A stretch of 64,000 nucleotides of DNA from Setoptus koraiensis (taxonomy: Eukaryota > Animalia > Arthropoda). The number at the start of each line of letters is the position of its first letter. Position 1 is the stretch's first letter. The notes under the pieces were generated by a model. That model was not told the DNA's origin. It did no database searches and saw only the letters and a list, made by a program, of their open reading frames with translations. The translations under genes were made by a program, and so were the position numbers. The DNA lies in the NCBI GenBank assembly GCA_048013815.1, contig CM106586.1:15438001-15502000 (forward strand), read 5' to 3'. This document shows positions 14,600 through 23,003 of the stretch, piece by piece.

Positions 14600-14995
14600 G
14601 ATGTGAACGTTAAAGATGGAACCTCGATAAATTAAGTCAATATACTTGCAGATTAGTCAATAAGGTATCTCTGTGTCTTCTTATTTATTGTAACCATGGT
14701 GCATTTATCGTTAGTTATTGGCACCTAGCGAGAGCGAGGGAGAGAGAGAGGGAGAGGGAGAGATGACTTTAAGTTGCGACGTTGTACAAATACTTACCTC
14801 ATGATTGGAGGGCGATCGATTTGTGCATTCTAGGGCGATTTCCGAAAGACTGAGGCTGTTTCTCTCCACCAAGGCCAAACGATAATTGAGCGAGGTATAT
14901 TCGAGCGCTGTTCCGCGACCAATACCTGAACCGGCACCGGTTATAAGGACCACTTTGGAGATAGTGGCGTCGTCGCTTCCATCATTAGGTAACAT
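14600..14995 (-). pseudogene. Truncated copy of the SDR gene (exon 1, part of the intron, and a decayed RGSI remnant)
   Basis: Exon 1 (14995-14798) is identical to 22627-22824. Beyond 14626 the sequence jumps to TCGAGGTTCCATC (13/13 with 23272-23284) and then decays. Confidence 0.8.
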
Positions 14996-17047
14996 ATTGG
15001 ACCAGAGTAGTAGCTATATGAACGAAGAACAATTTATTCTAGCTGGTCGTTTCGATCGAGTTGGTCTGTTCAGTGGCTTTTCGACACGAAAAAATATCGA
15101 CCCAGATATACATGCAGCCTCGTTATTATATTGTCGACGACAATGGCAACTGCTATCAGATGTTACAATTATGGCACGATCGACTTAATCCTTTAAATGC
15201 GAGCTTGCCATGTAGTTGCACCATGAACTTAACTGCATATAACTGGAACGAGAAACGCTGACGTTGTCATACAACAAAAGGGAGAGTTTGTGGATTCTGT
15301 TTGTGAATTCTGTCGCCATGTTGGCAGCAGCCATGTGCGACTTGTATTTTCGAATCAGAAAGTGATTACACCCGTGACATTGTCTGTTTTGGGCCATTTG
15401 TTAGCAACACAATTTTTCCAAAGTCGAACAAGAGGTCAACAATTGATTGGACAGGTATGGCAAGATAGTTGCGATTGGCAATCATCAAAAACTCTAGACA
15501 ACTTGTCACCGACACTTAACTAAGTTAACTTTGTTTTCTGGTGTGTTTAACTTGAAAAACGCGCCAAGATTCAACAATAACGCATGCGTTACATAATAGA
15601 ATAATGCCATAATGATGATCGGCGTAAATCCAGTTGGTGGTCTGTGGATAGACAGTTGCTTCGATGGTTGCCAGTCGCAATATTCACAGTGCTTGGCTGC
15701 GCTGCATGATGCACTAACACACTGTCTCGCGAGTCGCGATTCGCGAACAATGAATGAACATCACTGTAGCACCCAGACTGCGGTGAAAGTCGTTCAATTG
15801 CAACACTTTTACGCATGGCGCCAAAATTTGAAAAATGCACTATCAATACTGTAAATCACAATGGATATTTACGTGTGAAGGGGGGCGAGAGCCTGCTCAA
15901 ATTGATGCATTCTCACTGATTCTGCCCCGTGCGCATGAATTTCGCCACTTTACGACTTTCACTGTAGCTTTTCAACAGTACGGTTTTGTAAGGGCAAATG
16001 TTCAATTCGCATACCATTGTAGATAGAATGTCCATGGCACAATCGATGGCTTTGCTACACCAAACAAATTACTACCATCTAAGTCACCTAGATCAACACA
16101 GTCACAATTCGTTTATTCGCTATATTGAATCACGGGAAATTTTAGGCAGAATTAACATTATTATTAATTAATTAATTAACAAACTAAATATCAGCGACAA
16201 AATAATACTTACCAAACCAAAAATAGAATCATGAGTGCTGCTGATTTTGAAACAGGACCCATTTATGGACCATTCTTTGGCGTGATGGGCGCCGCATCAG
16301 CTGTCATATTCTCTTCATTGGGCGCAGCATATGGAACTGCCAAATCTGGTTCTGGTATTGCCGCTATGGCCGTTATGAGGCCAGAATTAGTGAATCAATC
16401 GATCATTCCTGTAGTCATGGCCGGTATCATTGCCATCTATGGTCTCGTGGTAGCTGCAGTCATCGCCAACAATATCAAACCACCACCGGAATATAAATTG
16501 TATCAAGGATTTCTACATTTAGGAGCCGGTTTATCAGTGGGTCTCTCAGGATTGGCAGCCGGATTTGCCATTGGTGTTGTGGGTGACGCCGGCGTTAGAG
16601 GTATAGCCCAGCAGCCTAGGTTATTTGTTGGTATGATTTTAATATTGATCTTTGCCGAAGTTCTAGGACTGTACGGTCTGATTGTGGCTCTGATTCTTAC
16701 CACTCATTAGTTGTTGGCCATACTCATGTACAACCACCGCCACATTCTTAGATCACATTTATATATAAATATATTATTATTACTATTATTGTGAGTATCA
16801 ATTAAACATGTACAACAATAACAACAATGTCAACAACTACAGATATACATACATACATAGTATTATTTGGTTGAAAACCCGAACTAAGTCTTTATTATGA
16901 TTTTTGCCACAAGCGAGAGGAGGGAGGCGCAAGATCTTTTAAATGAAGGAAAGAGCTGCCCCATCATACTACTAATAGCCCAGAACTTATACAAAATAAA
17001 AATGTACTATTTGCATCTTCTTTGAAACCAAATCTATTTATTTTTTA
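14626..17047. repeat. Left arm of large inverted repeat (palindrome)
   Basis: Reverse complement of 20574-23003. Mirrored ORF coordinates sum to 37621 or 37622, and the translations are identical. Confidence 0.97.
16231..16710 (+). CDS. ATP6V0C: V-type proton ATPase 16 kDa proteolipid subunit c, copy 1, intronless
   Basis: [42 protein letters not shown] and [28 protein letters not shown] (proton-carrying Glu). Confidence 0.98.
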
Positions 17048-17095
17048 GTTACTCAACAACATCTTTAAAGAAACAACCTACGTGAATACACCCGT

Positions 17096-20378: not shown

Positions 20379-20552
20379 ACTGAAAGGGGCACTTTGGTAG
20401 TGAAAAGCAAAGAGATCCACGTAATTTAAGAACGCGACCCAACACAAATCGTGTGGGCTGAAGCTGGAGTAAAGTACGCTGTCAAACCAACCGGCGTCTT
20501 CACTACTCTAGAAAAAGCAGGTAGCCATCTCAAGGGAGGAGCCAAGAAGATC
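20379..20552 (+). pseudogene. GAPDH: GAPDH pseudogene fragment
   Basis: [57 protein letters not shown] versus intact [58 protein letters not shown]; in-frame TAA, both ends missing. Confidence 0.95.
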
Positions 20553-20573
20553 TTCCTCAGATATAATATAATA

Positions 20574-23003
20574 TAAAAAATAAATAGATTTGGTTTCAAA
20601 GAAGATGCAAATAGTACATTTTTATTTTGTATAAGTTCTGGGCTATTAGTAGTATGATGGGGCAGCTCTTTCCTTCATTTAAAAGATCTTGCGCCTCCCT
20701 CCTCTCGCTTGTGGCAAAAATCATAATAAAGACTTAGTTCGGGTTTTCAACCAAATAATACTATGTATGTATGTATATCTGTAGTTGTTGACATTGTTGT
20801 TATTGTTGTACATGTTTAATTGATACTCACAATAATAGTAATAATAATATATTTATATATAAATGTGATCTAAGAATGTGGCGGTGGTTGTACATGAGTA
20901 TGGCCAACAACTAATGAGTGGTAAGAATCAGAGCCACAATCAGACCGTACAGTCCTAGAACTTCGGCAAAGATCAATATTAAAATCATACCAACAAATAA
21001 CCTAGGCTGCTGGGCTATACCTCTAACGCCGGCGTCACCCACAACACCAATGGCAAATCCGGCTGCCAATCCTGAGAGACCCACTGATAAACCGGCTCCT
21101 AAATGTAGAAATCCTTGATACAATTTATATTCCGGTGGTGGTTTGATATTGTTGGCGATGACTGCAGCTACCACGAGACCATAGATGGCAATGATACCGG
21201 CCATGACTACAGGAATGATCGATTGATTCACTAATTCTGGCCTCATAACGGCCATAGCGGCAATACCAGAACCAGATTTGGCAGTTCCATATGCTGCGCC
21301 CAATGAAGAGAATATGACAGCTGATGCGGCGCCCATCACGCCAAAGAATGGTCCATAAATGGGTCCTGTTTCAAAATCAGCAGCACTCATGATTCTATTT
21401 TTGGTTTGGTAAGTATTATTTTGTCGCTGATATTTAGTTTGTTAATTAATTAATTAATAATAATGTTAATTCTGCCTAAAATTTCCCGTGATTCAATATA
21501 GCGAATAAACGAATTGTGACTGTGTTGATCTAGGTGACTTAGATGGTAGTAATTTGTTTGGTGTAGCAAAGCCATCGATTGTGCCATGGACATTCTATCT
21601 ACAATGGTATGCGAATTGAACATTTGCCCTTACAAAACCGTACTGTTGAAAAGCTACAGTGAAAGTCGTAAAGTGGCGAAATTCATGCGCACGGGGCAGA
21701 ATCAGTGAGAATGCATCAATTTGAGCAGGCTCTCGCCCCCCTTCACACGTAAATATCCATTGTGATTTACAGTATTGATAGTGCATTTTTCAAATTTTGG
21801 CGCCATGCGTAAAAGTGTTGCAATTGAACGACTTTCACCGCAGTCTGGGTGCTACAGTGATGTTCATTCATTGTTCGCGAATCGCGACTCGCGAGACAGT
21901 GTGTTAGTGCATCATGCAGCGCAGCCAAGCACTGTGAATATTGCGACTGGCAACCATCGAAGCAACTGTCTATCCACAGACCACCAACTGGATTTACGCC
22001 GATCATCATTATGGCATTATTCTATTATGTAACGCATGCGTTATTGTTGAATCTTGGCGCGTTTTTCAAGTTAAACACACCAGAAAACAAAGTTAACTTA
22101 GTTAAGTGTCGGTGACAAGTTGTCTAGAGTTTTTGATGATTGCCAATCGCAACTATCTTGCCATACCTGTCCAATCAATTGTTGACCTCTTGTTCGACTT
22201 TGGAAAAATTGTGTTGCTAACAAATGGCCCCAAAACAGACAATGTCACGGGTGTAATCACTTTCTGATTCGAAAATACAAGTCGCACATGGCTGCTGCCA
22301 ACATGGCGACAGAATTCACAAACAGAATCCACAAACTCTCCCTTTTGTTGTATGACAACGTCAGCGTTTCTCGTTCCAGTTATATGCAGTTAAGTTCATG
22401 GTGCAACTACATGGCAAGCTCGCATTTAAAGGATTAAGTCGATCGTGCCATAATTGTAACATCTGATAGCAGTTGCCATTGTCGTCGACAATATAATAAC
22501 GAGGCTGCATGTATATCTGGGTCGATATTTTTTCGTGTCGAAAAGCCACTGAACAGACCAACTCGATCGAAACGACCAGCTAGAATAAATTGTTCTTCGT
22601 TCATATAGCTACTACTCTGGTCCAATATGTTACCTAATGATGGAAGCGACGACGCCACTATCTCCAAAGTGGTCCTTATAACCGGTGCCGGTTCAGGTAT
22701 TGGTCGCGGAACAGCGCTCGAATATACCTCGCTCAATTATCGTTTGGCCTTGGTGGAGAGAAACAGCCTCAGTCTTTCGGAAATCGCCCTAGAATGCACA
22801 AATCGATCGCCCTCCAATCATGAGGTAAGTATTTGTACAACGTCGCAACTTAAAGTCATCTCTCCCTTTCTCTCTCTCTCTCTCTCTCCCCCTCGCTCTG
22901 GCTAGGTGCCAATAACTAACGATAAATGCACCATGGTTACAATAAATAAGAAGACACAGAGATACCTTATTGACTAATCTGCACATATTGACTAAATTTA
23001 TCG
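20574..23003. repeat. Right arm of large inverted repeat (palindrome)
   Basis: Reverse complement of 14626-17047. Confidence 0.97.
20911..21390 (-). CDS. ATP6V0C: V-type proton ATPase 16 kDa proteolipid subunit c, copy 2
   Basis: Translation identical to copy 1. Confidence 0.98.

What the first reader, a model, noticed from the sequence alone, without database searches (positions are those of the whole stretch)
14626..23003. 8.4-kb gene palindrome: near-identical arms with two V-ATPase c genes and reciprocal loss of flanking genes
Seen: 14626-17047 and 20574-23003 are inverted copies around a 3.5-kb spacer. Coding and non-coding sequence matched wherever I compared. The only differences I found were one G-homopolymer indel (15391-15393 vs 22228-22231), the (GA)n tract length, and a few mismatches in the outermost ~130 bp. 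Symmetry continues in decayed form beyond the identical zone: a deleted SDR remnant outside the left arm and a GAPDH fragment with many substitutions inside the right arm. Inference: an old inverted duplication of SDR-VATPc-GAPDH lost SDR on one side and GAPDH on the other. Both proteolipid genes were kept and homogenised, plausibly by arm-to-arm gene conversion as known for Y-chromosome palindromes. The c subunit is needed in many copies per V0 ring, so a dosage benefit is plausible.
Basis: partly seen in the sequence, partly recalled or inferred. Interest (0 to 1): 0.78.

Follow-up and report, generated by a model that had tools for sequence, protein, structure and literature searches.

The report
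Mite gene palindrome kept alike
Two mirror-image 2.4-kb DNA copies, each with an intact proton-pump (V-ATPase c) gene, flank the GAPDH gene in a gall-mite-type genome; a related species has an inverted repeat at the same place, so the copies are old and kept identical by copying between them, which is a known process.

Summary
Arms 14625-17047 and 20574-23003 are inverted copies: 2,432 aligned columns, 5 mismatches, 3 indels. The 2,293-bp core differs by one G in a homopolymer. Each arm carries an identical intact 159-aa V-ATPase c gene.

The spacer holds the only intact GAPDH. GAPDH sits under a diverged third copy (P') of the V-ATPase c upstream region.

Five eriophyoid relatives have a single V-ATPase c gene head-to-head with GAPDH, next to the same WD40 gene. 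The palindrome is therefore derived.

The closest relative is a short-read contig from another species (GAPDH 96% aa). It ends on both sides in an exact 30-nt inverted repeat that maps to the inner arm ends. A decayed GAPDH remnant lies beside one end. In those 30 nt, all five between-species differences are present in both arms of each species.

A stranded GAPDH fragment next to the right arm is 17% diverged; the adjacent arms show no substitutions.

I read this as an old palindrome homogenised by arm-to-arm gene conversion. The dosage idea is untested.

The scan has already noted many similar palindromes elsewhere in this genome. This is a new member of a known kind.

The parts
12778..13923 (+). 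WD40 (STRAP/eIF3I-like) gene, the ancestral neighbour of V-ATPase c. It marks the left edge of the rearranged block.
   Evidence: ORF; Pfam WD40 families. Orthologues lie tail-to-tail with V-ATPase c in relatives L002, L005, L007 and L009.
14606..14625 (-). 20-nt patch resembling SDR exon 2 (codons 102-108), directly outside the left arm. Possibly a deletion or template-switch scar.
   Evidence: Local alignment, 17/20 to 23274-23293, starting exactly at the arm boundary. The score is within the range of shuffles.
14625..17047 (.). Left arm of the palindrome.
   Evidence: 99.34% to 23003-20574; the core 14755-17047 differs by one homopolymer G.
14798..14995 (-). Copy of SDR exon 1 (66 codons, TGxxxGxG motif) followed by most of intron 1. 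It has no acceptor site and no exon 2, so it is a truncated pseudogene copy.
   Evidence: tblastn 97% to the right-hand exon 1; GTAAGT donor read; no exon 2 homology to the left.
15413..16230 (+). P: upstream region of the left V-ATPase c gene. It is the part that also exists as the diverged copy P' in the spacer.
   Evidence: 15535-16230 against 18789-18172 (79.5% with gaps; 88.9% on 569 shared columns); 15413-15470 against 20278-20221 (89.7%).
16231..16710 (+). V-ATPase proteolipid subunit c gene, left copy. Intronless, 159 aa, intact.
   Evidence: ORF; PF00137 E 2e-33; 92-96% identical to eriophyoid orthologues, including Fragariocoptes setiger.
17096..18112 (-). GAPDH, the only intact copy. 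Intronless, 338 aa, tail-to-tail with the left V-ATPase c gene.
   Evidence: ORF; PF00044 and PF02800; 96% aa to sister contig L001 and about 82% to other eriophyoids.
18172..18789 (-). P'a: a diverged copy of the 696 nt directly upstream of the V-ATPase c start codon, now directly upstream of GAPDH.
   Evidence: A P'-like sequence also lies upstream of GAPDH in the sister contig L001.
20221..20278 (-). P'b: a 58-nt piece matching V-ATPase c upstream positions -761 to -818. It has the same orientation as P'a and lies 1.43 kb away from it across non-coding DNA.
   Evidence: 89.7% to 22151-22208; no Pfam, Rfam or tRNA hit in the intervening DNA.
20378..20552 (+). g: a GAPDH pseudogene fragment (codons about 62-120) in the mirror orientation of the intact gene. 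It has an in-frame stop and is 82.9% identical to 17753-17927.
20553..20573 (.). AT-rich 21-nt junction. It stands where about 705 nt of the GAPDH 3' part and its flank would lie, and it defines the inner end of the identity zone.
   Evidence: Sequence; coordinates.
20574..23003 (.). Right arm of the palindrome.
20911..21390 (-). V-ATPase proteolipid subunit c gene, right copy. Its protein is identical to the left copy's.
22627..22824 (+). SDR exon 1 of the intact gene, inside the right arm.
   Evidence: The Pfam adh_short model covers positions 1-49 here and continues at 50 in exon 2.
23039..23641 (+). SDR exon 2 (YxxxK catalytic part), outside the arm. The arm's outer edge (23003) lies in intron 1, 36 nt before the acceptor.
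   Evidence: The orthologue with the same downstream DNA is in sister contig L010.

Best explanation
This is a real, old gene-bearing palindrome in an eriophyoid (gall or rust mite type) genome.

Inferred history:
- In an ancestor shared with at least one other species, the conserved head-to-head pair of V-ATPase c and GAPDH was rearranged. The result was a unit in which SDR and V-ATPase c diverge from a shared 1.2-kb upstream region (P), and GAPDH lies tail-to-tail with V-ATPase c under a copy of that region (P').
- This unit was then duplicated in inverted orientation.
- One copy of GAPDH decayed to a 175-nt fragment. One copy of SDR has only exon 1.
- The uninterrupted homology between those two break points (2.4 kb: SDR exon 1, P, V-ATPase c and its 3' flank) has kept exchanging sequence by non-allelic gene conversion between the inverted arms. 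The arms evolve in concert and are now identical except at a homopolymer, a GA microsatellite and the outermost 25 nt.

What is shown: the structure, the ancestral gene order, an inverted repeat at the same place in a second species, and arm changes that are shared within a species but differ between species.

What is inferred: the conversion mechanism itself, its tract lengths, and the order of the earlier rearrangements.

The two identical V-ATPase c genes double the gene number relative to the single copy at this locus in relatives. Whether that is selected is unknown.
For: Structure:
- The arms are 99.34% identical over 2,432 columns, with no substitutions in a 2,293-bp core that includes non-coding DNA.
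- The ORFs and Pfam domains are intact.

Ancestral state:
- Five distinct relatives (L002/3/4, L005, L007, L009, L011) have one V-ATPase c gene head-to-head with GAPDH, 1.2-1.5 kb apart. Where the contig reaches far enough, V-ATPase c is also tail-to-tail with the WD40 gene. No SDR lies nearby.

Age:
- Sister contig L001 comes from a different sample (short-read Logan assembly; GAPDH 96% aa, about 88-90% nt).
- Its first 30 nt are the exact reverse complement of its last 30 nt. That is k-1 for a k=31 graph, as expected when a spacer is flanked by a collapsed inverted repeat.
- Both ends map to the inner ends of the window's arms.
- Beyond the 30 nt, its two ends stay 64% alike over 256 columns. 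This stretch includes a recognisable GAPDH 3' remnant (tblastn E 5e-5).

Concerted evolution:
- In those 30 nt the window species differs from the sister at 5 sites. Each difference is present in both arms of its species.
- SDR exon 1 and intron sequence inside the arm is 76.6% identical between species and about 96-100% between the window's arms.

Internal clock:
- The stranded GAPDH fragment differs from the intact gene at 30 of 175 sites, spread over all codon positions (10/5/15), and has a stop codon.
- At that rate about 390 differences would be expected in the core of the arms. None is seen.

The same tendency reaches P'. P and P' are 88.9% alike within the window species, whereas P' is 66% alike between species on the same 569 columns.
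Against: - Arm copy number, spanning reads and spacer orientation are unverified here.
- The sister's arm length is unknown. Only 30 nt or more of perfect inverted identity plus the decayed flank are seen, and its V-ATPase c contig was not found.
- The cross-species comparison of arm sequence covers only about 190 nt.
- The fragment clock rests on 175 nt and compares a pseudogene with a constrained gene.
- One recent long-tract event cannot be told from many short conversions.
- Short-read polishing of near-identical repeats could slightly inflate arm identity. This matters if the assembly is the published CLR/Flye/NextPolish one, which is unverified.
Confidence: 0.8

Rival explanations
1. This is a young inverted duplication. 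The 2.4-kb arms are identical simply because they were copied very recently, with no conversion involved. The diverged GAPDH fragment would then come from an unrelated earlier event.
For: The arms differ only at hypermutable sites and at the edge, which is what a very recent copy would show. No arm-wide divergence gradient is seen.
Against: - The GAPDH fragment sits in the mirror position and orientation, 21 nt from the arm edge.
- A related species, 10-12% diverged in the GAPDH coding sequence, has an inverted repeat whose inner boundary lies within about 19 nt of the same place, with its own decayed GAPDH remnant.
- A parallel, independent origin in both species would be needed.
Confidence: 0.08
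2. This is an assembly artefact. A false inverted duplication could have been made by the assembler from chimeric or fold-back long reads, or from divergent haplotypes in a pooled sample.
For: Reads could not be examined. If this is the published pooled-sample CLR assembly, heterozygosity was 1.13% and purge and polish steps were used. The scan's notes list very many palindromes in this genome, which could point to a systematic cause.
Against: - The spacer is 3.5 kb of unique DNA containing the only intact GAPDH.
- The two outer flanks are non-homologous: the WD40 side and SDR exon 2. The arms therefore cannot be alleles, and this is not a spacer-less fold-back.
- Arm differences and decayed extensions are as expected of real paralogues.
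- An independent short-read graph from another species shows the same topology.
Confidence: 0.05
3. This is a functional hairpin locus. Read-through transcription across both arms would give a long double-stranded RNA that feeds small-RNA control of V-ATPase c. The palindrome would be kept for that reason.
For: Perfect 2.4-kb inverted arms could pair if co-transcribed. The convergent gene arrangement makes read-through conceivable.
Against: - Both arms hold complete, conserved, intact protein genes with their own upstream regions.
- No Rfam family was hit.
- No expression data were available.
- Silencing an essential housekeeping gene is unlikely to be favoured.
Confidence: 0.04

Closest known systems
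Long near-perfect inverted repeats with paralogous gene pairs in Caenorhabditis (Zhao et al. 2007, PMC1803023)
   Same: These are autosomal, kilobase-scale inverted repeats that include whole genes and complete intergenic sequence. The orthologous structures in related species are more conserved than the sequence, which implies active homogenisation (abstract). The pattern here is the same: arms are identical within a species and 77-83% identical between species.
   Different: The lineage is different (an eriophyoid mite). The arms here carry one intact gene plus a truncated neighbour. The spacer carries a different, essential gene that has acquired a third copy of the arm's upstream region.
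Human and ape Y-chromosome palindromes P1-P8 (Rozen et al. 2003, as cited in PMC5490193; PMC3723533)
   Same: Inverted arms with more than 99.9% identity surround a unique spacer. They are maintained by arm-to-arm gene conversion, and the palindromes are older than the species splits.
   Different: The Y palindromes are 9 kb to 1.45 Mb per arm, lie on a non-recombining sex chromosome and carry testis genes. This one is 2.4 kb per arm, lies in a compact genome and carries a housekeeping gene. No population data on conversion exist here.
Gene palindromes in small arthropod and rotifer genomes (Folsomia candida, 11 palindromes, PMC5490193; Adineta vaga as cited there)
   Same: These are inverted duplications of gene blocks in small invertebrate genomes, discussed in the context of gene conversion.
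   Different: Those are multi-gene collinear blocks with substantial divergence (Ks about 0.2 for the Dscam2 palindrome). They were discussed in relation to parthenogenesis. Here the arms are nearly identical, and the evidence for homogenisation is a cross-species comparison.

Membership tests
Palindrome maintained by arm-to-arm gene conversion (concerted evolution of inverted repeats) | Two inverted arms of very high identity around a unique spacer | tested here: met
   99.34% over 2,432 columns; no substitutions in the 2,293-bp core; 3,526-nt spacer with unique GAPDH.
Palindrome maintained by arm-to-arm gene conversion (concerted evolution of inverted repeats) | The duplication is older than the arm identity suggests (orthologous structure in another species, or decayed homologous flanks) | tested here: met
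   Sister contig L001 has a 30-nt exact terminal inverted repeat at the same inner boundary plus a decayed GAPDH remnant. The window's own stranded GAPDH fragment is 17% diverged.
Palindrome maintained by arm-to-arm gene conversion (concerted evolution of inverted repeats) | Arms group by species, not by position (substitutions present in both arms of one species) | tested here: inconclusive
   Met for the only 30 nt where all four arm ends are known: 5 of 5 interspecific differences are shared by both arms of each species. The rest of the sister's arms could not be recovered.
Palindrome maintained by arm-to-arm gene conversion (concerted evolution of inverted repeats) | Conversion events or spacer inversions observed in populations or reads | not testable with these tools
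V-ATPase proteolipid subunit c (16 kDa, PF00137) | Two ATP-synt_C hairpin repeats, about 155-165 aa, conserved glutamate in the last helix | tested here: met
   PF00137 with two stretches, E 2e-33. 92-96% identity to eriophyoid orthologues named V-type proton ATPase 16 kDa proteolipid subunit. The FAEVLGLYG motif is present in the translation.
Glyceraldehyde-3-phosphate dehydrogenase | Gp_dh_N and Gp_dh_C domains, active-site SCTTN motif, full length | tested here: met
   PF00044 E 6e-39 and PF02800 E 4e-68. [12 protein letters not shown] is in the translation. The fragment at 20378-20552 fails: 58 codons with an in-frame stop.
Short-chain dehydrogenase/reductase (classical SDR) | TGxxxGxG cofactor motif plus the NNAG and YxxxK catalytic part | tested here: met
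   The right-hand gene has exon 1 with TGAGSGIG and exon 2 with NNAG and YCMSK. The left-arm copy has exon 1 only and fails as a gene.

The most novel reading that the evidence does not exclude
The palindrome may be part of a selected co-expression module. V-ATPase c and GAPDH are neighbours sharing one intergenic region in every eriophyoid relative examined. After the rearrangement broke that arrangement, GAPDH ended up under a copy of the V-ATPase c upstream region. That copy is itself kept more similar within the species (89%) than between species (66%). Three copies of one promoter would then drive two proton-pump proteolipid genes and the glycolytic ATP supplier together. Conversion would be the means by which their regulation stays matched.
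Probability: 0.12. Interest if true: 0.55.

Novelty: new member of a known kind. Interest (0 to 1): 0.38.

Why it matters
- It is a clean, small, autosomal example of concerted evolution of inverted repeats, with cross-species support, in one of the most compact arthropod genome types.
- It shows how deletions that interrupt homology set the limits of the homogenised zone. Pieces stranded beyond them decay.
- For users of this genome, V-ATPase c is present as two indistinguishable genes. GAPDH has a borrowed upstream region. The left SDR exon is a pseudogene piece. Short reads will map ambiguously over 2.4 kb on each side.
- Together with the many similar notes in this genome, it suggests that local inverted duplication followed by conversion is a common mode of change in this mite lineage. 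That claim needs a genome-wide, read-validated survey.

Tried and rejected
- The look-up of encoding contigs with the window's own GAPDH and V-ATPase c proteins found nothing, so the genome is not in that collection.
No depth, spanning-read, spacer-orientation or expression test could be run.
- An exact 27-nt arm-end pattern found nothing in the JGI metagenomes.
- I looked for the sister species' V-ATPase c arm among the protein hits. None carries the window-specific residues, and P0136 (contig 2,135 nt) turned out to be another species with the ancestral head-to-head order.
- I looked for SDR exon 2 remnants left of the left arm. Only a 20-nt patch was found, not significant by score.
- I looked for genes, RNA families, tRNAs or repeats in the rest of the spacer and the left flank. 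None was found.
- No similarity was detectable between the window's P region and the V-G intergenic region of the more distant relative L002. The origin of P' from the ancestral shared intergenic region could therefore not be traced.
- Rooting the GAPDH fragment relative to the species split gave 10 sites shared with the window gene against 5 shared with the sister gene (read from the alignment). That is too few to decide. It suggests the fragment stopped being converted after, or around, the split.
- The species identity as Setoptus koraiensis is only compatible with the data: two chromosomes and 47-50 Mb. It is not verified.
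Full report
**Observation**

The inverted repeat is real in the sequence.
- The repeat finder and a self-BLAST give arms 14625-17047 and 20574-23003. There are 2,432 aligned columns at 99.34% identity, with 5 mismatches, 3 gap openings and a 3,526-nt spacer.
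- A column-by-column alignment places all differences:
  - one extra G in a homopolymer (15390 / 22231);
  - a length difference and three mismatches in a GA-rich microsatellite (14730-14754 / 22868-22900);
  - two mismatches and a 2-nt indel in the outermost 25 nt.
- The core 14755-17047 (2,293 bp, mostly non-coding) has no substitutions. The inner boundary is sharp.
- This is the only large inverted repeat in the 64-kb window.

**Gene content**

The region from left to right:
- A WD40/STRAP-like gene, 12778-13923 (+).
- The left arm:
  - a copy of SDR exon 1 (14995-14798, minus strand) with most of intron 1, but no acceptor site and no exon 2;
  - about 1.2 kb of upstream DNA (P);
  - an intronless 159-aa V-ATPase proteolipid c gene, 16231-16710 (+).
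- The spacer, with an intact intronless GAPDH, 17096-18112 (-), tail-to-tail with the left V-ATPase c gene.
- The right arm, with the identical V-ATPase c gene, 20911-21390 (-), then P and SDR exon 1 (22627-22824).
- SDR exon 2 (23039-23641) lies outside the right arm. The arm's outer edge (23003) lies in the SDR intron.

I searched the two SDR exons separately by reference and did not submit a joined model.

Nothing else in the spacer or the left flank matches Pfam, Rfam or a tRNA.

**Additional homologies**

- 18172-18789, directly upstream of GAPDH, is a diverged copy (P') of the 696 nt directly upstream of the V-ATPase c start codon. It is 79.5% identical with gaps and 88.9% on 569 shared columns.
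- 20221-20278 continues that homology, matching positions -761 to -818, after 1.43 kb of unmatched DNA.
- 20378-20552 is a GAPDH fragment (codons about 62-120) in mirror orientation. It is 82.9% identical to the intact gene, has an in-frame stop, and its differences fall at all codon positions (10/5/15). It lies 21 nt from the right arm's inner edge. In the left copy the matching stretch lies 706 nt from the edge. About 705 nt of GAPDH 3' sequence are therefore missing on the right, replaced by a 21-nt AT-rich junction.
- Left of the left arm only 20 nt match SDR exon 2 (14606-14625). The match is weak by score but starts exactly at the boundary.

Both ends of the identity zone thus coincide with places where homology is interrupted in one copy.

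**Organism and ancestral state**

- The closest named proteins are from mites. V-ATPase c is 94% identical to that of the gall mite Fragariocoptes setiger, and GAPDH is 81% identical to that of Oppia nitens.
- Earlier notes of the scan call this a gall-mite genome in two pieces of about 50 Mb in total. That size and chromosome number are compatible with the published Setoptus koraiensis assembly: 47 Mb, two chromosomes, PacBio CLR, Flye, NextPolish, pooled wild mites. I could not verify the identity.
- Contigs from five distinct relatives (L002/L003/L004, L005, L007, L009, L011) all show one V-ATPase c gene head-to-head with GAPDH, 1.2-1.5 kb apart. Where the contig reaches far enough, V-ATPase c is also tail-to-tail with the WD40 gene. 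No SDR lies nearby.
- The window's arrangement (two V-ATPase c genes, tail-to-tail with GAPDH, next to SDR) is therefore derived.

**The sister species**

- Two Logan contigs from one other sample (SRR33593474) are much closer than the rest: L001 (GAPDH 96% aa, about 88-90% nt) and L010 (SDR exon 2, 88% aa).
- L001 has a P'-like sequence upstream of GAPDH and the V-ATPase c 3' flank downstream, as in the window.
- Its first 30 nt are the exact reverse complement of its last 30 nt. The two ends remain 87% alike over 60 nt and 64% alike over 256 columns. The left-hand part still translates to a recognisable piece of the GAPDH C-terminus (residues 294-316, E 5e-5).
- Both ends map to the inner ends of the window's arms (16999-17028 and 20622-20593).
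- Thirty nucleotides is k-1 for a k=31 assembly graph (the value of k is from my own knowledge of Logan). A contig that starts and ends on the same 30-mer in opposite orientation is what a unique spacer between two collapsed inverted arms produces.
- So an independent short-read data set from another species shows the same layout: arm, decayed GAPDH remnant, P', intact GAPDH, arm. Its inner boundary lies within about 19 nt of the window's.
- L010 shows that the sister has the intact SDR with the same downstream DNA. It starts inside SDR exon 1.
- The sister's arms themselves were not recovered. Their length is unknown.

**Conversion or youth**

- In the 30 nt where all four arm ends are known, the two species differ at five sites. 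Each difference is present in both arms of its species.
- SDR exon 1 and intron sequence inside the arm is 76.6% identical between species. The window's arms are identical there apart from the microsatellite.
- At the divergence of the stranded GAPDH fragment (30 of 175 sites), about 390 differences would be expected in the 2,293-bp core. None is seen.
- P and P' are also more alike within the window species (88.9%) than P' is between species (66%) on the same columns. This suggests older exchange with the third copy.
- Together these results fit a palindrome older than the species split. Its uninterrupted homology block is homogenised by gene conversion between the inverted arms, while pieces cut off by deletions decay.
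- A very recent single long-tract event cannot be told from many short ones.
- A young duplication would need the same structure to arise twice.
- An assembly artefact is unlikely for three reasons: the unique spacer, the non-homologous outer flanks, and the independent graph topology in the sister.

**History (inferred, uncertain)**

1. The ancestral state was WD40, then V-ATPase c on the opposite strand, an intergenic region, then GAPDH.
2. The tail-to-tail junction of GAPDH and V-ATPase c, and the P / P' pair, could have arisen by a tandem duplication of the pair followed by losses. SDR came to lie next to P.
3. The unit of SDR, P, V-ATPase c, GAPDH and P' was then duplicated in inverted orientation.
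4. Whether the SDR and GAPDH copies were once complete or were truncated at the time of copying cannot be decided. "Reciprocal loss" describes the present state correctly.

**Function**

- Both V-ATPase c genes are intact and identical, each with at least 1.2 kb of identical upstream DNA. Both are probably expressed.
- Relatives have one copy at this locus. A dosage benefit is possible but untested.
- Glycolytic enzymes and the V-ATPase are functionally coupled in other organisms (for example PMC8491875, PMC6720459). The conserved neighbourhood of the two genes, and the P' copy in front of GAPDH, make a co-regulation reading conceivable. I give it a low probability.

**Comparison with known cases**

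- The closest known case is the set of near-perfect inverted repeats with paralogous gene pairs in Caenorhabditis. Their structure is conserved across species more than their sequence is (PMC1803023).
- Y-chromosome palindromes are the classic larger example (PMC3723533).
- Gene palindromes have also been reported in Folsomia candida (PMC5490193).
- I found no paper reporting such palindromes in Eriophyoidea.
- The scan itself has already noted many similar palindromes and promoter copies elsewhere in this genome. This is one more, with better cross-species support than sequence alone gives.

**Verdict**

This is a new member of a known kind and is of moderate interest.

Noticed in passing
window 18113-18789 and 20221-20278: GAPDH sits directly under a diverged copy of the V-ATPase c upstream region. 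The homology starts at the base next to the V-ATPase c start codon and stops 59 nt before the GAPDH start codon. The sister contig L001 also has it. P and P' are 89% alike within the species but 66% alike between species, which suggests occasional conversion with this third copy.
   Followed up: partly
L002, L005, L007, L009, L011 (relatives): The microsynteny WD40 / V-ATPase c / GAPDH, with V-ATPase c and GAPDH head-to-head and 1.2-1.5 kb apart, is conserved in five distinct eriophyoid-like contigs. In Fragariocoptes setiger (L008), V-ATPase c lies in a different neighbourhood, with no GAPDH or WD40 within 10 kb.
   Followed up: partly
window 32294-33065 and 40557-41319: A direct repeat of about 780 nt at 86% identity, 8 kb apart. 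The right copy ends just before the 324-aa gene (41402-42376, minus strand). That gene follows GAPDH directly in relatives but is inverted and 23 kb away here.
   Followed up: no
window 16231-16710 / 20911-21390: The window's V-ATPase c has F where ten related sequences have W in the N-terminal WETGP motif. It also has AVIANN for AVISNN and TTH for TSH at the C-terminus. These lineage-specific changes are present in both copies.
   Followed up: no
window 9758-10132; 57168-57294 and 59993-60127: A short tandem duplication (about 72%, roughly 200 nt) and a direct repeat of about 130 nt at 77.5%. Neither was examined.
   Followed up: no
L001:1-60 and 2697-2756: A Logan contig whose two ends share an exact 30-nt inverted overlap is a usable signature for finding palindrome spacers in short-read graph assemblies of other species.
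   Followed up: partly
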